Origin: Amphiscolops sp. MND2022
Taxonomy: Eukaryota
NCBI GenBank assembly: GCA_964187785.1
Contig: OZ076421.1
Coordinates: forward strand, 20,522,001-20,586,000
Reading direction: 5' to 3'
Length of the DNA: 64,000 nt
Shown here piece after piece: positions 21,536 to 32,561 of this stretch (position 1 is the stretch's first letter; every line of letters begins with the position of its first letter). Position numbers and translations under genes: made by a program. A model generated the notes under the pieces. The model did not search any database and was not told the origin of the DNA. It saw nothing but the letters and a program-made list of their open reading frames with translations.

Positions 21536-23609
21536 ACTCTTCTTGTTGTTGTTGTATTGACCTCACAGCAGGCTGAATGGACTTCTCCCGGCGGTTGTTA
21601 TCAGAATATCCTAGTTGTGTTTCGGCAGTTTTGGCAGTCACAGTATATTTGGTAGGTGCACAAATGATCTTCAAGAAAGAGCTGATGGAAGTATTGCCAC
21701 ACGAAGTCCAGAATTCTATTTCTGAGGCCCAAAGGTTCAAAAAATGCCACCCTGTCCGGAAGTTTGTTCGCAAGTCGGCACATCCTGAAACAGAACTCAG
21801 CGCGAGCGTTCTAAGTACGGGCAGTTTTTATATCAAACATCATTCTGCCCTTTTTAGAAATTGTCGTTGTCATATTCAAGTCTACCCCCGTGAAGCGCAT
21901 TTCGTGAAAATATTCTAATAGAAATAGTACGCTCTTTAGTTAGAAGAGCATAGGCACTGGTAGAAGGTTGCATTTTAAGCGAAGCGCTTTGTGAGTTGAA
22001 TGATAGTCACGGCATACCCATTCGAGGACTCTTTTCTGGAAATTTTTAAGTAATTTTAAACCGGTTCTGGAAAGACTGAAGCAGCAACAAGAAAATGTCA
22101 AAATTGGCAGTAACATAGAATTATACAAATTTAGGCTGACTCGCATTTGTGTAGCGGAGGTGTTCCTCTTGATAAAGAAGAAAACTGTTAGCTTTACGTA
22201 TTTCGCTTTCAATATGGGTCGACCATGATAAATTACTAGTTACCATCAATCCAAGATCTTTGGCAGATGTAAGTCCCCGGAGAGGTAAATTACTCAAATA
22301 GAATTGTTCTTCCGTTGTGCCTCGGAATGTAATTATAAAACACTTTAGGTCCTCGACAGCAAAAACATTTTGTTTTTCACTCCCCATTTAGTAAAGTTAT
22401 CAAGGTCCTTTTGAAAAACTTCTTTGTTGAAAATCACTATGCTTTCTCAGGTCATCAGCATAAAAGGAAGGTTCACTATAGACTAAATATTCCGGTAGAT
22501 CGTTGACAAATATGAGAAATATCAACAGTCCAATAAAAGACCCTTGCGTTACTCCTTTTGTTCTGAGAAGTTTATCAGAGCGTTCATTGCCAAAACGGAC
22601 AATTTGGTATCGATATGTTAAATCATCTTTGAGAAGCTACAGTAGACATCCACCAACTCCTATTGTAGAAACCTTTTGACTTAACTCAATCTCAAAATTG
22701 ATGCAGTGTGTAACGGCTGCATGCCCTTATCCTGCGCTGAGGCTTGACAAGCTTTACGCCGCCCTGATCCGTTGCTTAGTGCTGTGGACCGTCACTAAAC
22801 AATTCCTGGTTTCTTGTTTTAAAGGACTGTATCTTTTGGCTTGATGGGTCCGATGTGACCCGTGGAATCTCCTGCGATCCCTCTTTGCACTGAATTGGAT
22901 CCGATGTGATCCTGCACACACACACTTCCCTCACTGTATCTTCACGCGCTCCGGCTCTCCAACTATGAGAGTAGCTACTTAGTCGCTCTAACTCTAGCGA
23001 AAAGTTGTGAAGATTGAGAAGTTGATTAATTAGTCTCGCGGTCCTGAGACCCAACTTGACTATAGCTATTCAGTGGAGAAAATCTCTATCTAATAATGGT
23101 ATACATATGGTTTACAATTCTAGAGTAAATATAAGCAAATATCAGTTGAAATATGTTGTATAAATAAATGACATTTAAAGCATAAAATGAAGTTATTGAC
23201 TAAGTAAACAAAGAATGTGGTGGTTTTGGCATGTTGGTTAGGTGGGTTAGAAAGTATGTTTACACAATGTAAATATCATTAATTTCAACAGAGATGAATT
23301 TCCTTCAAGGTCATATGAGAAAATCACATAATAATTAATATATCAAAATTGGGATTTCATGGGGTCCGACCTAGGTCACTTTGGGTGTTAATTGCTCGGA
23401 ACCCAGGGGAGATACGGGGTAGGTTGTTAAGAGTGAAAAGTTAGTGTATCACCACCACTATATGTGTGCCAAGTTTCAAGGTGATTGAATCAGTGGTTTT
23501 CCGGGACGGGGGGTGGTGTTTTTTTACATAGGGTCATTTTTGCTTAGACTTGTATTTTTCCATCTAAAATCTTGATAAATTTTCTAAGTGTTTTGAGTTG
23601 TAAGTTTCA

Positions 23610-26291
23610 TCAGTCACGTTCGAATTTGAGTTTCTGATCTCGCAATTGACTGGCGCCAACATTGCCGGCCCTGTTTTTCTCCCGAAAAACACTTTCGTAG
23701 AACATGGGTGCCAGTTTCACTACTGGTCTTTTGAGTTTTCCATCTTCAGTTTTCACCAGCGCTGATCTCACTCGCCCATCGCTTCCATGATAGACTTCCA
23801 ACACTCTGCTGGTCTTGTAGTATGCTCTTTTTACATTTTCATCTACTTTCCAAACCAAATCATTGACTTCTAGTTGTCTAACTTCTTCTTTATTCCATTT
23901 TCCAAATAATTCAAGTTGCATCATCATTTCTTCCCATGATACAGCCGGCCCTATGAAAGGCCCATTTTCCGAACATGTTGTTGTTTGTGCTTTTGAAGAA
24001 CCCAATTGCGTTTCCATTAGCGATATTTCATCTGCGAATTCATCTATCACAATCTTTGCATATAGGATGCCAGTTGTCAATTGAACACTTTCAACCATTC
24101 CATGTAATAGGTTTGAGGTGTGTTCAAACTTCCAAGCTTGTTTCTTCGGTCGCTTGCGGTGGCCTTTGCTCAACTGAGTTTTATCCATGCCGTTAGCCTG
24201 TGCCACCGCGTCCATCCCAGAGTTTCCATTACCAATCCGAGGGTTCCACTCATTGTTATTACTCGGGATAGTTTCTTCTACAAGGCTTACTTTGAAGTCA
24301 ACATCAAATTTCTCTCCAAAGGTTGCAATCACGGTACGTGTTTCACATTTAGCATTGCATTCAACGGGTTTGTCATGTTTCGCTGCAACATGACATAGCT
24401 TTCGATACATTGCTTTTTCACTACAATCATCAAGCAGTGCAAATTGTTGCTCATGCACAAATCCATAACTTTTGTCGAATTCAAAACATTTGTTTCCTTC
24501 TTCAAGAAGTAGAGTACTGTCATGAAGCATCGTCACTTCAAATATTTTCCCTTGCTGTACATCCTGTTGAACGGTGAAAATTTCTGCACTCTCTTGCAGC
24601 AGTTCATGTTGGACACTCGATTCTCCCAAAGTTTGCTTGCTAGATGCGAATGATAAGAATCTATGCTCCTTCCTTGTTTCCGTCATTGTGTGATTCAAGT
24701 TCTCCTTTGTTTGACTTATCGAATGCTCACTCATGCCCAAGTGAATATCTTCTTCCAAAACCTGTTTGGTATCCACGAGGAGGGTTTCTGAACGGACGTC
24801 TTGCCGACCGTTGTCTACAATGAATGTTTCTGACAATTTCTGTATACATTCCGTTGTGATGAGCTGCGAGGTTCCTTGGTTTGCAAGTTTCACGTCTGGT
24901 TGTGATATTGCTTCTTTTCTGCACGTTTCGTTATCAGCTTCGGTGCTGTCTTTCCGATCAGCTTGCTCATCGGCTTCTGTGGGAGGTTTTGAGTCTCTCC
25001 TAAGAGCGGAGAACTTTCCTTCGTGAACTAATTTCACTGCATTCTCTGGTTTCGAATGAACTGATAGTGCAATATCGGCTGTTTCTGTCTTGTCCATGCA
25101 TCTTGAGACTTCCGTGAAACTGTCGACTGATGAGACACTTCGGACACTAGACCCTTGTCTGCTCGATGCTTCCTCTATTTCTCTTTCCTTTTCAGCTATT
25201 CTCGCTTTGCGGGCAAGCTGTTCATGCAAGTCAGCTATTTCCATTTGTATTGCTTCACGCTTCAGTTTCTCGAGTCGGGTTTGCAGTTCTTCTTGCTCTT
25301 TCTGAGCTTTTACTTTCAAATAAAGAACTCGTCTAGCAATTGAACTTTTCGAAATCACTGAGCTTCTGTTGCTTCTGGTTTCAACCAGTTTTGGATGTTT
25401 GCCCAGTTCCTCTATTTCCAATTGTCCAGTCTCGCTTCTTTGGCCTTGGACTTCATCCGATTTCTGATCTTCCGCTTTCTCTAATGCTAGAGGAAACAGT
25501 CGATCTCCATTAGACCACTTCGTGCTAACTGTTGGCCTGTTGTCTATCAGGATTGTTACGTCAGACACCTTACTGTTTTCTTCGAGTAGTGATGTCACAT
25601 CGTTGATTGAGTTTTCCACTTCAGATATGCTGTCTCTCATACCACAGCAACTTTCTTGTTCCTTGGTCTTTCTTGACCGTGTCAGTGATTCCTTTTCACT
25701 AGCTGTTTCTTTTACACAATTAGGTTTTGCCTGATGGACACGTCTTTGCCTCAACTTTCTTGTGCGAGGGCATCTCATAGCTGCGTCTGCAGATGTTCCA
25801 TTTGTCATCTGACTCAGTTTCAACTCTTTTGTCCCATCAATTGGACACTTCAACATTTGATGCACATCGGGGAACCAATATCCCCAACTCGATTCCAGTT
25901 TCGCAAAGCATTCGTCCCATTCAGTCACACTTCGATTGAGCTGTCTTTGCGTTTCTTCATTTGTAAGACTCAACATAAAGTCTACACAGAACAGCAATGC
26001 CTGTCTTCTCTCGCGGTATTCAATTACCCAATCAATCAAGTTTCTTTTGGATACAACAGCTGTTTCCTCATCGAGCTTGTCATCCAAGTCTTTTCCTAAC
26101 GTATGGATCTTTTCCACATGTAGGGGTACAATATCCCAATAGAGGCACCACGCGTACCAATCTGACGCATTTTCCAAATCTTTCGGTCTGAGCTCCATCA
26201 GTTGTTGGCTCTGCTTTGTGTTTCTTTCCTCAAACACAATTGCCATTCGAGGGTGGTGCATCATTTGCCTTTCTTTCTTTTTGGCTTTCAT
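23610..26291 (-). CDS. 893-aa BEL-derived fusion ORF (gag-like coiled coil, unknown region, integrase C-terminal DUF5641-like tail)
   Basis: Uninterrupted ORF with a Ser-rich plus coiled-coil segment (SSVISKSSIARR...EKEREIEE) and C-terminal KWNKEEVRQLEVNDLV...GSDGRVRSALVKT. No protease, YxDD, RNase H or DDE motifs seen. Confidence 0.7.
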   Translation of the reverse strand: MKAKKKERQMMHHPRMAIVFEERNTKQSQQLMELRPKDLENASDWYAWCLYWDIVPLHVEKIHTLGKDLDDKLDEETAVVSKRNLIDWVIEYRERRQALLFCVDFMLSLTNEETQRQLNRSVTEWDECFAKLESSWGYWFPDVHQMLKCPIDGTKELKLSQMTNGTSADAAMRCPRTRKLRQRRVHQAKPNCVKETASEKESLTRSRKTKEQESCCGMRDSISEVENSINDVTSLLEENSKVSDVTILIDNRPTVSTKWSNGDRLFPLALEKAEDQKSDEVQGQRSETGQLEIEELGKHPKLVETRSNRSSVISKSSIARRVLYLKVKAQKEQEELQTRLEKLKREAIQMEIADLHEQLARKARIAEKEREIEEASSRQGSSVRSVSSVDSFTEVSRCMDKTETADIALSVHSKPENAVKLVHEGKFSALRRDSKPPTEADEQADRKDSTEADNETCRKEAISQPDVKLANQGTSQLITTECIQKLSETFIVDNGRQDVRSETLLVDTKQVLEEDIHLGMSEHSISQTKENLNHTMTETRKEHRFLSFASSKQTLGESSVQHELLQESAEIFTVQQDVQQGKIFEVTMLHDSTLLLEEGNKCFEFDKSYGFVHEQQFALLDDCSEKAMYRKLCHVAAKHDKPVECNAKCETRTVIATFGEKFDVDFKVSLVEETIPSNNNEWNPRIGNGNSGMDAVAQANGMDKTQLSKGHRKRPKKQAWKFEHTSNLLHGMVESVQLTTGILYAKIVIDEFADEISLMETQLGSSKAQTTTCSENGPFIGPAVSWEEMMMQLELFGKWNKEEVRQLEVNDLVWKVDENVKRAYYKTSRVLEVYHGSDGRVRSALVKTEDGKLKRPVVKLAPMFYESVFREKNRAGNVGASQLRDQKLKFERD

Positions 26292-26656
26292 TTGTTCATA
26301 TGACTCTTTTGTTCCACTGAGGGCTTTCGAACTTCACAACTGTTTCTTGTAGGCTTTGTCACTTTTCCCAACTCTGCAATTTCTCAGATACAAAGTGTCA
26401 ACTGCTCAATCCGGTAATCAATCGCCAATTCTTGAAGAATCAACCCAATACTGTCGATTATACTTGCCTTCGTTGACGAACTTGATTGTTTCAGTGGATC
26501 AAGTCCCTCTGACTTGATCCCTTTGCTTTACTTGGTGGATTTACTTGCAATGACGTCTTAGACCAGATCTTTGCTTCAATCAGGAATACGTTCCCAAAGA
26601 GTACAATTCGTCTCAAAACTAGAATTGATGCACAAATACCTCCAGAGTGCCGCTAA

Positions 26657-26820
26657 AGCCCAACTCCCAGAGTACACAATAGCCCAATCTCCCAGAGACA
26701 CAGTAGCCCAATCTCCCAGAGACACAGTAGCCCAATCTCCCAGAGTCACAATAGCCCAATCTCTCAGAGTCACAATAGCCCAATCTCCCAGAGTCACAAT
26801 AGCCCAATCTCCCAGAGACA
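26657..26820. repeat. 24-bp tandem repeat (about 7 units) in the BEL leader
   Basis: AGCCCAATCTCCCAGAG(A/T)CACA(G/A)T repeated head to tail. Confidence 0.9.
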
Positions 26821-26891
26821 CGAAATCAGAGACTCCAAGACGCAGTTCTTGGGCAATCTTCTGTTGTCTACCAACGAGTCGTCTTCTTCTA

Positions 26892-26984
26892 GTCCGGGTC
26901 GTCCACCAACGAGTTGTCCGGGTCGTCCACCAACGAGTTGTCCGGGTCGGCGGACCAACGGGTTGTCCGGGTCGGCGGACCAAA
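26892..26984 (-). repeat. Four tandem 24-25-bp units, each containing a PBS-like motif
   Basis: On minus: TGGTCCGCCGACCCGGAC twice, then TGGTGGACGACCCGGAC twice, starting 2 nt after the 5' LTR. Confidence 0.85.
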
Positions 26985-29900
26985 TGTAACGGCTGCTTGC
27001 CCTTATCCTGCGCTGAGGCTTGACAAACTTTACGCCGCCCTGATCCGTTGCTTAGTGCTGTTGACCGTCACTAAACAATTCCTGGTTTCTTGTTTTAAAG
27101 GACTGTATCTTTTGGCTTGATGGGTCCGATGTGACCCGTGGAATCTCCTGCGATCCCTCTTTGCACTGAATTGGATCCGATGTGATCCTGCACACACACA
27201 CACTTCCCTCACTGTATCTTCACGCGCTCCGGCTCTCCAACTATGAGAGTAGCTACTTAGTCGCTCTAACTCTAGCGAAAAGTTGTGAAGATTGAGAAGT
27301 TGATTAATTAGTCTCGCGGTCCTGAGACCCAACTTGACTATAGCTATTCAGTGGAGAAAATCTCTATCTAATAATGGTATACATATGGTTTACAATTCTA
27401 CAGTAAATATAAGCAAATATCAGTTGAAATATGTTGTATAAATAAATGACATTTAAAGCATAAAATGAAGTTATTGACTAAGTAAACAAAGAATGTGGTG
27501 GTTTTGGCATGTTGGTTAGGTGGGTTAGAAAGTATGTTTACACAATGTAAATATCATTAATTTCAACAGAGATGAATTTCCTTCAAGGTCATATGAGAAA
27601 ATCACATAATAATTAAAATATCAAAATTGGGATTTCATGGGGTCCGACCTAGGTCACTTTGGGTGTTAATTGCTCGGAACCCAGGGGAGATACGGGGTAG
27701 GTTGTTAAGAGTGAAAAGTTAGTGTATCACCACCACTATATGTGTGCCAAGTTTCAAGGTGATTGAATCAGTGGTTTTCCGGGACGGGGGGGTGGTGTTT
27801 TTTTACATAGGGTCATTTTTGCTTAGACTTGTATTTTTCCATCTAAAATCTTGATAAATTTTCTAAGTGTTTTGAGTTGTAAGTTTCATCAGTCACGTTC
27901 GAATTTGAGTTTCTGATCTCGCAATTGACTGGCGCCAACACAGTGATTATTAATTGAATTTTGAATATTGGAATGACACAAATGTAATCGAAAGCGATAT
28001 AAATATAATGTGTACAGGTCACAGCAGGTGCCAGAAAAAGTACAATTTAGTTCACTGTCTGGCAGGTACCTGTCAAGTCTGCTATCTATTTTGACCTCAA
28101 TCGTTTCATCGGCTGTTGGTCAGCCGGCCAGCTGGTCGGCTTTCAGCCATCTAGACCTGATACCCCCGCTCGGCTGAAAGTCTTTTCGTATGCTGTATCG
28201 TCTTGAGTCTGCCCGATTTTTTTGTGAAGAAGTCCGCAATGTTGTCCGCTGATGAGACAAACTTCAAGTCAATTCCGTGCTCCCTGCACTTGACCGTGTC
28301 CTTGAGGAACGCTAGGCGGGTGGCGAAGTGTTTCGCCTTGTAGCCACCATCGTCCTTCGAGACTAGTGCCAAACACGATTGGGAGTCGCCGAGAATGGTG
28401 GTTTGTTTCGTCTCGCCAATGCACTCCAGGATCCCTTGTAAGTGAAGTGCTTCCTTAACCGCTTCGCTCTGTGCGTGAACCTCTGCTTCTGTCGTTGATG
28501 TGGCCACGCATGTCTGTTTCTTCGCTGACCACGAGATCGCGCCACTCCCGTAGCTGAAACAGTATCCAGTCACGTTTCTGCGGTCGTCCTTGCAGCTCGC
28601 GTAGTCCGCGTCTGAGTACCCTGTCAAGTGTGCCTCGCAGTTCCACCAGTATGTGATGCCCACGTCTTTGGTGCCCCTAGGGTACCGCAATACATGTTTT
28701 GCCGCCCGCCAGTGAACCAGACTATGATGGTTGAGGAACCTTGAAGGAGATGAGCTGCAAATGCCAGGTCAGGTCTGGCCGTCATCACTAGGTAAGAGAT
28801 GCTTCCCACTAGTCCTCGGTTGTCGCATTCAGCTATCTTCGAAACTTCCTCTGAACCGTCTTCCGGCTGGTCGTCTTTGCTGAGTCCACATTTTTCTGGT
28901 AAGGGAGTAGAAGCGATCTTACAGTTGTGCATACCGAATTTCGTCAGCAAGTTTGATATGTACAGCTTGTGGCTCAACGTCAAATAATCTTGTTCTGCTT
29001 TGAATGCAATGCCCAGGAACCACGCAAGAGGGCCAATGTCACCAATTGTGAACTGTTTGCCCACTTCTGCCTGAAACCATCGTCCAAAGTTCTCGTCGGT
29101 TGGACCATAGACGATGTCGTCAACCCACACCAGTGCCCAGTAATGATGGTCGCCCCTCTTTTGTGTCCAAAGTCACTTGTCGTGCTGCGAAGAGTGAAAC
29201 CCCAGCTGCCCCAGTCGATGCGATAGGCACTCGTACCAGTTGCGCCCTGATTGTTTGAGCCCGTATAGCGATCTCTTCAGTTTACAGACCATGTCGCTGT
29301 CGCCCTGCTCGAACCCTTCTGGCTGCTCCAGAAAAATCTCTTCGTCTTTGGGTGCATTGAGGTTGGTCTCTGGTTTCACGGCCAATGGATCTTTGTGATG
29401 TGGCACTTTGCGGTGAAATTCAACGAAGACGGCATTGTGACAAAGTACAGGGCACGTTTTGTGGCGCGGGGCTTCACTCAGACACCTGGCTTAGACTACC
29501 ACGGGACGTACTCACCAACGGTCAGACTGTCAACATTGAGGACAGTGATTGCGTGCGGCATGTGACAGGGCATTAAGTTCCGGCAAATGGATATAAAGAC
29601 AGCCTCACCTCGTTCGTCATCAAAGAATCGTACTCTTGCTGCATCGCTACTTTCCAGTTAGAGTCAGCCAGAGCCTCGGCAGCGGATCCAGGGACCGTCG
29701 ATGCCACCAATGCCTCGCTGTGTAGTGCCAGGTTCTCGAGCTCGTCCCCCATCACGAAGTCATCGAGTCGTCGAGGCAGTCTGGCGTTTCTCCGCTGTCG
29801 CCCTGGTTCGCTTCTCTGCGGCTGTGGGTTGTCGTCCTCGTCATCCATGTGTCCAGTGTTGGGAATTGTTTCGTCGGCTACTTCTACTTCTTCAACATCT

Positions 29901-32110
29901 GGTGATGAACCCTTCATGTCGTGTAGACCGTTGTCATAATGGATGGTCGTCTCCCGGCATCTATCGTGAGTCATTACTGTGGCGACAGATGTAACACCTC
30001 CTGGGAAGCAGTCCATGTTGAACGTCATGTTCCTTGATGTCCACACCTTGCTCGGGTTTCGATCAGGATGTAGCCAAAGCATAAGGCCGAGGTTGTTTTG
30101 GCAGACCCGTCTCGAGCATGCACCTGGCTATTCCTGTGACAGTGCCCAACACACGCTCAGTTTTGCCATTCTCCTGGGGAGTATAGGGCGCTGAGTACTC
30201 CTGCAGAAATGCTTTCTTGCGACACATCTCGTTGAAACCCCGTGATTTCTATTCTTGTGCCCCGTCTGGGACCAGTGTTCCAGGTGAGCCCACGTCCGCA
30301 ATGAAGAGTTCCTGCAACTCAATGACCTCGTCTCTTGTCTGCATTGGGTACATGACAGCATATCGAGAGTTGCTGTCAATGAAGTTGATTGAATATCGGA
30401 AACCCTGGTATGACTCCTGATGTATTGGCCCCAGCACATCAGTGTGAAAAATGTCCAGCTTTTTCTCCGCTCTGGTGCACGATGCCTTGATAACAGGTGC
30501 ACGCTTGGCCTTCTCTTCTGCGCATGTGTCAAAATGCCCTGCTGCTCCGTCCTTCCGGATGTACATACCGTCGACTAGCTTCGTTAGCCGTGCCACAGCA
30601 TTGAAGTTGTTGTGTCCCAGAGTCCTGTGCCACTGCACCAGGGTTCTGCTTTGGGCTGCATGGCTGCCCAACCAGGGTGACCAAACCTTGCATCCTCCAC
30701 ATCGATGTTCAATGCCTGGGAGATGTTCCACTGGGAGCGCTCTTGGTCCAAAGTTATACACAAAAGGAAGAAAACGAAGTGTATAGGTCATCACTGGTAC
30801 AAACCAAAGGAAGGAGGGTTCCGTGTTATGTCCTGATGTTCGCTTCCTTCCCGATTCTGACTATTGCACCCTGCTCGGCTAGCTTTTTTACTGAAATCAG
30901 GTTGCGGGTGTAGGTGGGTACCCAGAAAGCATGCTTCAGCTCGAGCTCACACATCCTGTCCTTGCTATCCAGCACCCCACATCGTCCTGTGCCTCTACCG
31001 TCCACTCGTGTTCGAATCCCGTTGGCATTGCCCACATCAGTGTTGAATGCCTCGTCGAGTTCCTTGAAGAGAGCCCTATCCTTCAGCATGAACCCGTTGC
31101 AACCCGAGTCCACCGATAGCTCGAGTCCTCCTTCCTCTGAAGCCCCTTCAAAGCTTCGGAAGCTGAAGAAGCCTTGCTTCTCTGGACCCCTGTTGGTGCC
31201 ACTGGACTGCCCCTTCTTGCTCTTGCACTCCCTTGCAAGATGTCCCTTCGCATTGCACTTGAAGCACGCCCTGCTTTCCTTTAACCTGCAGTCACTCGCC
31301 ATGTGACCCTCCTTTTGGCAATTGAAACACGTGATCTTCCTGCTGCTGTTGCCCCCGCATGAGTGGAATGCAGTTGAAGCCACGTCAGTGCCAGGCTCTG
31401 CCCTTGTGTTGGCAAAGTTGATTAGGTCCTACTTCATCTCTTCGTAGCCCTTTGGTGGTCCGAACTTGAGAACCGTCGCGATGCTCTCGAAAGTTCGAGG
31501 AAAGCCCTTCATCACCATCGCGCTGAACATCGCATTGGAAGTCATTTCTCCTGCTTCTTGAAGGTCCAGCTGTATTCCCTCAGCCCATGTGAGGTAGTCA
31601 GTCACCTTCTCCCCTGGTGTCATCTTCAGTCCAGCCAGCTGAGTGAGCAATGTCTGGATGCGGGGCCTCTCGGTGCTGCGGTGCTTCCCCACAATGGCTT
31701 TCCAGGCTTCCACCCTTTCTGGCATGTGAAGGCGGATGAAGTTGATTGAAGCCTTGTCCAAGCACTGAACAAATTTGCACCATACCATGAAGCGCTGCTT
31801 CTCCCGCTCGTCCTCTACGTTGACCGTGGCAGTTTCTTCTCCCCTCGTCTCGTCTTCCTTGTAGGAAGGCACAGTCAGCTTGTCGTCGAGGCATTTCCCC
31901 AGGTTGAGCATGTGCATCCTCGCCTCGAACTGCTCGCTGAACGCCGCAAAGTCCTCGTCTTTGCCAGAGAAGGAGAGCTACTCCAACTTCGAGTGGGTGA
32001 CTGTCATCTCAGCTGCTGACTGCTTGGCTCTACGTCAACTGGTTGATCTGGGCTAGTTAGGTTGTGATCATCGAGGTGGAGTTGGTCGTCATTGTATGTC
32101 AGTTATTGTT

Positions 32111-32123
32111 TGGGCCCATAACT
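32111..32123 (-). promoter_or_regulatory. Copia PBS of the internal (half-tRNA) initiator-Met type
   Basis: AGTTATGGGCCCA directly after the 5' LTR on the minus strand; matches the GGTTATGGGCCCA site known from Drosophila copia. Confidence 0.75.
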
Positions 32124-32561
32124 TCTCAAAATTGATGCAATGAATAATAATTGATTTGAATATTGGAATGACACAAATGAAATCGGAAGCGATATAAATA
32201 CTATTGTTCACAGGTCACAGCAGGTGGCAGAAAAAGTACAATTTAGTTCACTGTCTGGCAGGTACTTGTCAAGTCTGCTATCTATTTCGACCTCGATCGT
32301 TTCATCGGCTGTAGGTCTGCTGGTCGACCTTCAGCCATCTAGACCTGATACTCAAAATGAGGAACTTTGTCAAGAGCTTTTGCCATTTCTGCATACAATA
32401 GCTTTTGTTCATTTTCTGTAAAAAAGAAAGCAAATTTGTTTCTGGCCATCAAACACATAGAAACCCTGATAAAAGCCATCAAGACGCCAGAGCTAATTCG
32501 CATACACATTGCCCAATCTCTGAGGGTCAACATCCAAAAGTTTGCAGGTTTCATTTGTTTT

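What the first reader, a model, noticed from the sequence alone, without database searches (positions are those of the whole stretch)
22685..32355. Copia element with non-canonical LTR termini 5'-TATC...GAGA-3'
Four landmarks fix the ends: the 5-bp TSD CTCAA on both sides, the PPT GAGCGGGGG directly before TATCAGG, the PBS directly after TTTTGAGA, and agreement of both LTRs. Integrases normally need a terminal CA, and the non-TGCA motifs I know of are mostly from plant Copia. A TA...GA end in an animal Copia would imply altered integrase end specificity and would be missed by default LTR finders.
Basis: partly seen in the sequence, partly recalled or inferred. Interest (0 to 1): 0.72.

Follow-up and report, generated by a model that had tools for sequence, protein, structure and literature searches.

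The report
Dead Copia retrotransposon with TA...GA ends
This is an old, broken Copia-type jumping gene whose repeat ends really do read TA...GA instead of the textbook TG...CA. That is not peculiar to this copy: its whole lineage keeps only the outermost T and A fixed, so the finding is real but only modestly new.

Summary
On the minus strand, 22690-32350 is a Ty1/Copia element: a 227-bp 5' LTR, a PBS touching ...TTTTGAGA, a degraded gag-PR-IN-RT region, the PPT GAGCGGGGG touching TATCAGG, and a perfect 5-bp TSD (CTCAA).

- **GA end:** it is family-wide. All 34 full-length LTR copies aligned end in GAGA or GAGT, or in three tandem-array copies GATT; none ends in CA. Eight elements have TSDs.
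- **TA end:** it is a minority variant. Of 70 LTR starts, 58 are TG, 8 TA, 3 TT and 1 TC. TA sits in both LTRs of four separate insertions, so it was inherited and transposed.
- **The family's usual motif:** TG...GA, as in rice Tos17.
- **Relatives elsewhere:** they end in CA, GA, AA or TA next to the same tRNA-iMet anticodon-arm PBS. One family has TT...GA ends in three insertions with nearly identical LTRs.
- **Genome-wide:** only 23 of 197 such PBS junctions are CA.

The best reading is an integrase that needs T...A and tolerates any subterminal base, not a new specificity. This copy is dead (LTR divergence about 9%).

The parts
22685..22689 (.). Left copy of the 5-bp target-site duplication CTCAA (TTGAG on the element's strand)
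   Evidence: Read directly. It is identical to 32351-32355.
22690..22708 (-). Distal piece of the Copia 3' LTR (its U5 end). On the minus strand it reads ...CACTGCATCAATTTTGAGA. 22704-22708 (CAGTG) is one copy of the nested element's TSD.
   Evidence: It matches the 5' LTR at 32124-32142. Other family LTRs carry a single CACTG at this point.
22709..27940 (-). Nested LTR element, not part of the Copia. It has 956-bp LTRs that are 99.2% identical, TG...CA ends and the TSD CAGTG. It holds an 893-aa ORF (23610-26291, minus strand) with a DUF5641 match, and a 24-bp tandem repeat at 26651-26842.
   Evidence: Repeat finder and self-BLAST, sequence, Pfam PF18701 E=3.4e-12.
27941..28162 (-). Proximal piece of the Copia 3' LTR. 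On the minus strand it begins TATCAGG at 28162. 27941-27945 is the second copy of CAGTG.
   Evidence: BLAST against 32138-32351 gives 88% identity over 224 bp. Sequence.
28163..28171 (-). Polypurine tract GAGCGGGGG, abutting the first base of the 3' LTR
   Evidence: The same (A/G)GCGGGGG|T(G/A)TCAGG junction occurs at 17 exact-match sites in the genome.
28172..32108 (-). Degraded gag-pol region. Pieces in all three frames match Retrotran_gag_2, two CCHC knuckles, Pol_BBD (protease), gag_pre-integrs and RVT_2. Each frame holds 31-44 stops.
   Evidence: Frame scan, Pfam.
32109..32123 (-). Primer-binding site AGTTATGGGCCCAAA. The family norm is (G/A)GTTATGGGCCCAGA, complementary to the anticodon arm of initiator tRNA-Met. 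It abuts the last A of the 5' LTR.
   Evidence: The pairing to the tRNA-iMet anticodon arm is from my knowledge of the tRNA sequence. The genome's own ...CTGGGCCCATAACCCAG sites appear.
32124..32350 (-). 5' LTR, 227 bp. On the minus strand it reads 5'-TATCAGGTCTAGATGG...CATCAATTTTGAGA-3'.
32351..32355 (.). Right copy of the 5-bp target-site duplication CTCAA
   Evidence: A contig of run X1 spans 32314-32440.

Best explanation
Window 22690-32350 (minus strand) is an old, dead copy of a small Ty1/Copia family (about 4.4-4.7 kb, LTRs 222-237 bp). The family's integrated ends are 5'-T(G>A,T)TCAGG...TTTTGAGA-3'.

The PBS matches the anticodon arm of initiator tRNA-Met, as in Drosophila copia and yeast Ty5, and touches the last A of U5. 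The PPT touches the first T of U3. The finished linear cDNA should therefore be blunt and end exactly at the LTR ends, as in Ty1. Integrase would then join the 3'-terminal A of each strand across a 5-bp stagger.

The 3' ends of the two transferred strands read ...TGAGA (U5 side) and ...TGACA, ...TGATA or ...TGAAA (U3 side). The terminal A is fixed and the base before it is free.

The G-for-C change at the U5 end is fixed in the whole family. The A-for-G change at the U3 end arose in one sub-lineage, was copied into both LTRs of its progeny through the 3'-LTR U3 of the RNA template, and did not prevent further insertions.

Shown: the anatomy, the ends, the TSDs, propagation of both variants, and the same freedom in relatives. 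Inferred: half-tRNA priming, blunt cDNA, and that the tolerance lies in the integrase.
For: - **Anatomy and boundaries:**
- **Family census:** at least 40 LTR matches.
- **LTR alignment:** similarity begins at T(G/A)TCAGG after either the PPT or unrelated flank. It ends at GAGA before either the PBS or unrelated flank.
- **Perfect 5-bp TSDs:** window TTGAG, C12 CCCTT, C2:87M TCCTT, C2:15M CCAAA, C8 ATTCC, C6 AGAGG. Two more match 4/5.
- **U5/PBS junction TTTGANA|RGTTATGGGCCCAG:** 14 GAGA, 20 GAAA (a sister family) and 0 GACA.
- **U3 start:** 58 TG, 8 TA, 3 TT, 1 TC.
- **TA in both LTRs at four separate loci:** the window, C12:15.82 Mb, C5:5.00 Mb and C7:62.25 Mb.
- **Clustering on the tree:** all 8 TA LTRs fall in one 15-row subclade and none among the other 19 rows. 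The label clusters this tightly in only 2 of 500 shuffles.
- **Relatives in other assemblies with the same PBS:**
  - L049, L050 and L051 are TT...GA in three insertions, with LTRs 99-100% identical and TSDs AAAAG, CTTAT and AATTT.
  - L048 ends in TA.
  - L044, L054 and L055 end in CA.
  - L043, L045 and L053 end in AA.
- **Whole-genome NA|GGTTATGGGCCCAG:** CA 23, GA 42, AA 60, TA 72.
- **Integrase core:** the catalytic region, including ENGKIERxWGT, is invariant across CA, GA, AA and TA types.
- **Literature:**
  - Tos17 is TG..GA, TARE1 is TA..CA and AtRE1 is TA..TA. Non-TGCA elements are mostly small Copia with short LTRs (10.1101/137141; PMC5659011).
  - Drosophila copia uses a half-tRNA primer, and Ty5 uses the iMet anticodon stem-loop (PMC5371799 and its reference 14).
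  - Ty1 integrase used DNA ends processed to C/GA-3' (PMC2939329, citing Kiechle 2000).
Against: - No copy of this family examined is intact (12 full-length copies). Activity with these ends is inferred from past insertions only.
- The LTR tree is poorly resolved. It needs 3-4 TA/TG changes, so a single origin of TA is allowed but not shown.
- For the other families counted, I could not verify that the LTR ends directly at the PBS. Some of those dinucleotides could be spacers.
- A one-base 3' processing step by integrase cannot be excluded from integrated copies alone.
- Seven integrases are too few to detect residues that co-vary with end type.
- In yeast, changing CA to AC does impair Ty1 integration (PMC2939329), so tolerance is not unlimited.
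Confidence: 0.82

Rival explanations
1. The TA and GA ends of this copy are mutations acquired after insertion into an ordinary TG...CA element.
For: The copy is old (LTR K2P 0.09) and heavily mutated. Most family copies do start with TG (58 of 70).
Against: - GA is present in every family copy at both 5' and 3' LTRs, and no GACA junction exists.
- TA is present in both LTRs of this element and of three other insertions with different TSDs.
- The G in TGT is not in a CpG context, so two parallel hits at the same base are very unlikely.
Confidence: 0.03
2. The boundaries are misplaced: the true LTR ends lie a few bases in or out and are TG...CA.
For: Several sequences near the ends could be mistaken for the true boundary.
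- TTTTGAG occurs both in the 5' flank and at the LTR's 3' end of this copy, which could mislead a reader.
- A G precedes TATC in both LTRs.
- A CA lies 11 bases inside the 3' end.
Against: - Across 35 copies the flanks diverge exactly outside T(G/A)TC and GAGA.
- Shifting either boundary by one base destroys the 5-bp TSD in the window and in the other elements.
- The bases after the internal CA are present in 3' LTRs too, so by definition they belong to the LTR.
Confidence: 0.02
3. The family has an integrase with a changed, specific requirement (GA at U5, and TA in the sub-lineage), rather than general tolerance.
For: - GA is fixed in this family.
- The two ends share TGA-N-A.
- The Rosaceae TGTT study argued for integrase divergence in non-canonical families (PMC5659011).
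Against: - Within the one family, the U3 end occurs as TG, TA and TT while GA stays at U5. One integrase therefore handled at least C, T, A and G before the terminal A.
- Relatives at 41-62% pol identity carry all four subterminal bases, with an invariant catalytic region.
Confidence: 0.1
4. TA-ended copies were defective passengers. The G-to-A change arose several times in source 3' LTRs, and each gave only dead-end progeny mobilised in trans. TA would then be barely tolerated rather than neutral.
For: - The tree needs 3-4 changes.
- TA is a minority (8 of 70).
- The four TA elements measured have LTR K2P of 0.07-0.13. The youngest pairs (0.013, 0.039, 0.044) are all TG.
Against: - All TA LTRs lie in one subclade, and a single origin is not excluded.
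- Even passengers had to be integrated, so the TA end was used by integrase at least 4-6 times.
Confidence: 0.15

Closest known systems
Tos17 (rice Ty1/Copia) and the non-TGCA Copia class described with LTR_retriever (bioRxiv 10.1101/137141)
   Same: - 5'-TG...GA-3' termini, which is this family's majority motif.
- 5-bp TSD.
- A small element (Tos17 is 4.3 kb) with short LTRs. The non-TGCA Copia mean is 272 bp; this family has 222-237 bp.
- Copia domain order.
   Different: - The host is a plant, not an animal.
- Tos17's PBS was not compared here.
- The TA...GA and TT...GA combinations seen here are not among LTR_retriever's motifs.
TARE1 (tomato, TA...CA) and AtRE1 (Arabidopsis, TA...TA)
   Same: The LTR starts with TA instead of TG in a Copia element (cited in 10.1101/137141 and PMC5659011).
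   Different: There, TA characterises the family. Here it is a minority sub-lineage of a TG family and is combined with GA.
Drosophila copia and yeast Ty5 (priming by the initiator tRNA-Met anticodon arm, or 'half-tRNA')
   Same: The PBS (G/A)GTTATGGGCCCAG is complementary to the anticodon stem-loop of tRNA-iMet, not to its 3' end, and lies directly after the LTR. Priming mode is cited in PMC5371799. The match of the copia PBS letters is from my memory.
   Different: From memory, Drosophila copia ends in ...CA before this PBS. In this genome 88% of such junctions are GA, AA or TA. Clade membership by RT phylogeny was not tested.
GalEa clade of metazoan Copia
   Same: Small aquatic-animal Copia elements with short LTRs and CCHC gag knuckles.
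   Different: GalEa has the PBS TGGTAGCAGAGC (the 3' end of tRNA-Met) and TG...CA ends (PMC3587641, PMC5445492). Neither is found here.
Ty1 of yeast (integration chemistry)
   Same: The LTR abuts both PBS and PPT, so the cDNA is blunt and needs no 3' trimming. The TSD is 5 bp. Ty1 integrase has been seen to use ends finishing in CA or GA (PMC2939329, citing Kiechle 2000).
   Different: Natural Ty1 is TG...CA, and changing the dinucleotide to AC strongly lowers integration (PMC2939329). Ty1 uses the 3' end of tRNA-iMet.

Membership tests
Ty1/Copia LTR retrotransposons | pol domain order protease - integrase - reverse transcriptase - RNase H, with a Copia-type gag | tested here: met
   Window pieces, in this order on the minus strand, match Retrotran_gag_2, zf-CCHC x2, Pol_BBD, gag_pre-integrs and RVT_2. 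Better-preserved copies add rve, SH3_retrovirus and a full RVT_2 match at E=1.7e-61.
Ty1/Copia LTR retrotransposons | Two direct LTRs, a PBS after the 5' LTR, a PPT before the 3' LTR, and a 5-bp target-site duplication | tested here: met
   TSD CTCAA on both sides, plus seven further elements with their own TSDs.
Ty1/Copia LTR retrotransposons | LTR termini 5'-TG...CA-3' (usual, but not strictly defining) | tested here: not met
   This copy is TA...GA. The family is TG (58/70), TA (8), TT (3), with GA at the 3' end in all copies.
Non-TGCA Copia elements (Tos17-like TG...GA class) | Non-canonical termini confirmed by several independent insertions with TSDs | tested here: met
   Eight family elements with 5-bp TSDs flanking T(G/A/T)...GA.
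Non-TGCA Copia elements (Tos17-like TG...GA class) | Small element with short LTRs | tested here: met
   LTRs of 222-237 bp. Elements are 4.4-4.7 kb without nested inserts. The comparison figures (272-bp LTR mean; Tos17 4.3 kb with 138-bp LTRs) come from 10.1101/137141.
Non-TGCA Copia elements (Tos17-like TG...GA class) | Shared descent with the plant non-TGCA lineages | not tested
The resemblance is one of kind, not shown kinship.
GalEa clade | PBS TGGTAGCAGAGC directly after the 5' LTR | tested here: not met
   The PBS here is (G/A)GTTATGGGCCCAG(A). The GalEa PBS is taken from PMC5445492 and PMC3587641.
Copia elements primed by the tRNA-iMet anticodon arm (Drosophila copia / Ty5 type) | PBS complementary to the anticodon stem-loop of initiator tRNA-Met | tested here: met
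   GGTTATGGGCCCAG is the reverse complement of CTGGGCCCATAACC. The genome holds tRNA-like sites reading CTGGGCCCATAACCCAG. Assigning this to tRNA-iMet positions 27-40 rests on my knowledge of the tRNA sequence.
Copia elements primed by the tRNA-iMet anticodon arm (Drosophila copia / Ty5 type) | Actual use of a cleaved half-tRNA as primer | not testable with these tools
Named metazoan Copia clades (Hydra, CoMol, CoMar, Copia, 1731, Mtanga) | Placement in an RT/RNase H tree with reference elements | not tested
   No reference sequences were reachable. The database hits carry no clade names.

The most novel reading that the evidence does not exclude
In the animal Copia lineage primed by the anticodon arm of initiator tRNA-Met, integrase recognises only the outermost T...A. 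The subterminal base is free to drift, so most families are non-TGCA. In this genome only 23 of 197 LTR/PBS junctions are CA, and relatives in other organisms show CA, GA, AA and TA at U5 and TG, TA and TT at U3. One of those relatives is a TT...GA family with nearly identical LTRs. If so, surveys of marine-animal Copia that filter on TG/CA, or on the plant-derived motif list, systematically miss most of the superfamily. The conserved 'CA' rule of retroviral-type integrases would be reduced to a single A in a whole natural clade.
Probability: 0.55. Interest if true: 0.5.

Novelty: new member of a known kind. Interest (0 to 1): 0.36.

Why it matters
Non-TGCA LTR ends are documented almost only in plants. 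The papers I found on animal Copia diversity (PMC11889832, PMC6238403, PMC3587641) either do not mention termini or report TG...CA.

This locus and its relatives give a clean animal example. One family carries TG, TA and TT starts with a fixed GA end, and a neighbouring set of families uses every subterminal base.

Two practical points follow.
- **Annotation:** finders or filters that require TGCA, or the eight LTR_retriever motifs, would reject TA..GA and TT..GA elements. That may contribute to the reported scarcity of Copia in animals.
- **Biochemistry:** the lineage offers natural substrates for asking how much of the CA rule an integrase of this superfamily really needs.

The individual element in the window is dead and has no functional consequence of its own.

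Tried and rejected
- **Canonical boundaries.** I looked for TG...CA by shifting the ends one or more bases and by using the internal CA 11 bases from the end. I rejected this because the TSDs are lost and the multi-copy alignment fixes the ends.
- **GalEa membership.** Rejected on the PBS.
- **Intact family copy.** I looked for one to compare integrases. None of the 12 full-length copies is intact, so I used the longest uninterrupted pieces.
- **Fetching other PBS-bearing families.** I requested 20 further loci (the CTAGA, TAATA, TCTTA, TGAAA families and others) to check that their LTRs abut the PBS. I did not try to get those letters another way, so remain junction counts only.
- **L046 and L052.** L046, a relative at 47% identity, gave LTR ends I could not reconcile with a TSD. 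L052 showed no LTR pair. Both were left out.
- **Split 3' LTR.** The tree and the distance use only the 221-222-bp proximal part, with the columns of the nested element masked.
- **Read laying.** It returned only short contigs of a repeated family. It confirms the junction at 32350/32351 but says nothing about expression.

Full report
**What is at the locus**

The window is G000:C13:20522001-20586000 of a 1.07-Gb genome. The element lies on the minus strand. In plus-strand coordinates it runs as follows:

| Feature | Window coordinates |
|---|---|
| TSD CTCAA | 22685-22689 |
| LTR piece, minus strand ...CATCAATTTTGAGA | 22690-22708 |
| Foreign nested element | 22709-27940 |
| Rest of that LTR, minus strand starts TATCAGG at 28162 | 27941-28162 |
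| PPT GAGCGGGGG | 28163-28171 |
| Coding region | 28172-32108 |
| PBS AGTTATGGGCCCAAA | 32109-32123 |
| 5' LTR (227 bp) | 32124-32350 |
| TSD CTCAA | 32351-32355 |

- Self-BLAST finds the LTR pair as 27941-28163 against 32138-32351 at 88% identity. It also finds a second, much younger pair, 22709-23661 against 26985-27940, at 99.2%.
- That second pair belongs to a nested 5232-bp LTR element with TG...CA ends and its own TSD CAGTG. Other family LTRs carry a single CACTG at exactly that point.
The one omission is that the 3' LTR is split.

**It is a Copia, and a dead one**

- The interior has 31-44 stops in each frame.
- In order along the minus strand, the surviving pieces match Retrotran_gag_2, two CCHC knuckles, the Pol beta-barrel (protease) domain, gag_pre-integrase and RVT_2.
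- Better-preserved copies elsewhere add the integrase core, the SH3-like domain and a complete RVT_2 match.
- The two LTRs differ by K2P 0.09 over 210 columns. The nested element's LTRs differ by less than 1%.

**The ends, tested on the family**

The 5' LTR finds at least 40 matches in the genome, at 84-91% identity apart from the window's own LTR. I aligned 35 distinct LTR copies with 25-bp flanks.

- *Upstream:* similarity begins at T(G/A/T)TCAGG. It is preceded either by the PPT (...AGCGGGGG) or by unrelated sequence.
- *Downstream:* similarity ends at ...TTTTGAGA. It is followed either by (G/A)GTTATGGGCCCAGA or by unrelated sequence.
- *TSDs:* the window, C12:15.82 Mb (CCCTT), C2:87.2 Mb (TCCTT), C2:15.1 Mb (CCAAA), C8:29.6 Mb (ATTCC) and C6:38.96 Mb (AGAGG) have perfect 5-bp TSDs. 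Two more elements match 4/5.

Moving either boundary by one base destroys these TSDs, so the boundaries are right.

**Which part of TA...GA is the family's**

Exact-pattern counts over the whole genome separate the two ends.

- *U5/PBS junction* TTTGANA|RGTTATGGGCCCAG: 14 GAGA, 20 GAAA (a sister family) and no GACA.
- *LTR start* TNTCAGGTYYAGATGG: 58 TG, 8 TA, 3 TT, 1 TC.
- *PPT junction:* 15 TG and 2 TA.

GA is therefore fixed in the family and TA is a minority state.

TA is nevertheless not a private mutation of this copy.

- It is in both LTRs here, and in both LTRs of elements at C12:15.82 Mb, C5:5.00 Mb and C7:62.25 Mb. It is in one LTR at four more sites.
- The TA-bearing elements whose flanks I could pair have different flanks and TSDs.
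- The G is not in a CpG.
- On an LTR tree built without the two terminal columns, all 8 TA LTRs fall in one 15-row subclade and none among the other 19 rows.
- That subclade is unresolved, so one origin is allowed but not shown.
- Both LTRs of a new copy take their U3 from the 3' LTR of the template. A G-to-A change there would therefore appear in both LTRs of every descendant, which is the pattern seen.

**The wider lineage**

The nearest proteins in the public collections are full-length Copia polyproteins at 41-62% identity, on short contigs from other samples. I read the ends of those contigs. All carry the same PBS type.

| Loci | U5 end next to the PBS | Notes |
|---|---|---|
| L043, L045, L053 | AA (...GAAA or ...AAAA) | |
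| L048 | TA (...GAATA) | The same end precedes unrelated flank at its 3' LTR |
| L044, L054, L055 | CA (...TTAACA) | Different flanks at the 3' LTR in L054 and L044/L055 |
| L049, L050, L051 | GA, with TT start (5'-TTTCAACTG...CCCTAAGA-3') | One family, three insertions, LTRs 99-100% identical, TSDs AAAAG, CTTAT, AATTT |

Within the window's genome, the dinucleotide before GGTTATGGGCCCAG is CA 23 times, GA 42, AA 60 and TA 72. These figures are junction counts, not verified termini.

**Integrase**

I aligned the integrase regions of one GA, three AA, one CA, one TA and one TT...GA representative.

- They share the HHCC, both catalytic D blocks and an invariant ENGKIERxWGT block around the catalytic E.
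- No position visibly tracks the end type.
- Seven sequences have no statistical power. The result is what relaxed tolerance predicts.

**Mechanism proposed**

- *Minus-strand priming:* by a 5' half of tRNA-iMet paired to the PBS. This is inferred by analogy with Drosophila copia and Ty5 (PMC5371799).
- *Plus-strand priming:* from the PPT.
- *cDNA ends:* both primers abut the LTR, so the cDNA is blunt with ends identical to the integrated ends, as in Ty1.
- *Integration:* integrase joins the terminal A on each strand with a 5-bp stagger.
- *Specificity:* the two transferred ends read ...TGA-N-A. N is G at U5 and C, T or A at U3.

The published record fits this.

- Ty1 integrase used ends processed to C/GA-3', but an AC end is poor (PMC2939329).
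- Tos17 is TG..GA, TARE1 is TA..CA and AtRE1 is TA..TA.
- Non-TGCA elements in plants are mostly small Copia with short LTRs (10.1101/137141; PMC5659011).

**Comparison with what is known, and novelty**

- The element is a member of the Copia superfamily and of the known kind 'non-TGCA Copia'.
- Its majority motif is the Tos17 motif.
- It is not GalEa-like, because GalEa has a different PBS and TG...CA ends (PMC3587641, PMC5445492).
- Placement among the named animal clades was not testable here.
- Software lists of odd motifs exist for one annelid (PMC8220671). I found no paper describing terminal-base freedom in animal Copia. The large surveys (PMC11889832, PMC6238403) do not mention termini.
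- The TA..GA and TT..GA combinations are not in LTR_retriever's motif list as quoted in PMC8220671.

**Verdict**

The finding is real and tidy but modest: a new animal member of a known class. The possible wider point is that this tRNA-iMet-arm-primed lineage needs only T...A. That point is suggested, not yet proven.

Noticed in passing
window 22709-27940: A young nested LTR element: 956-bp LTRs 99.2% identical, TG...CA ends, TSD CAGTG. Its only long ORF (893 aa, 23610-26291, minus strand) matches DUF5641 alone, the C-terminal domain seen in BEL/Pao pol. It also carries a 24-bp unit repeated about 8 times at 26651-26842. It looks like a non-autonomous BEL/Pao derivative. It was also noted by the scan as s1-152487.
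   Followed up: partly
L035 (G000:C10:29316895-29326500), L040 (G000:C11:46886500-46896499), L020 (G000:C3:63806876-63810110): Several family copies sit in head-to-tail arrays (LTR-internal-LTR-internal). A single LTR there has the PPT on one side and the PBS on the other. L040 has three LTRs at 2.29-kb spacing, all ending ...TTTTGATT followed by the same sequence, which suggests tandem amplification of a deleted unit.
   Followed up: no
G000, 20 sites listed (e.g. C1:66759024 and C1:66762438): A sister Copia family has LTRs ending ...TTTGAAA directly before GGTTATGGGCCCAG. It is more numerous than the GAGA family at this exact junction (20 against 14).
   Followed up: no
G000 genome-wide: The word RGTTATGGGCCCAG occurs 633 times, but only 197 of these are NA|GGTTATGGGCCCAG junctions. 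Hits with a pyrimidine five bases upstream are strongly lopsided by strand (110 forward, 511 reverse). Many of the rest read ...CTGGGTTATGGGCCCAG, the tRNA-iMet anticodon arm itself, including a cluster at C8:62.076-62.145 Mb. A large one-strand array of tRNA-iMet genes or a tRNA-derived repeat is likely, but I did not examine it.
   Followed up: no
L049, L050, L051 (sample ERZ25878734, contigs ctg11121l, ctg24504l, ctg24194l): In another organism's assembly, a related Copia family (41% pol identity) has three insertions with 99-100% identical 194-195-bp LTRs, uninterrupted 1310-aa ORFs, termini TT...GA and a shorter PBS match (GGTTATGGGC). By LTR identity these insertions look recent.
   Followed up: partly
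window 32109-32123 and family copies: About a third of family copies, including this one, have A instead of G as the first PBS base (AGTTATGGG). This shortens the pairing to the tRNA by one base. The variant does not track the TA/TG state of the LTR start.
   Followed up: partly
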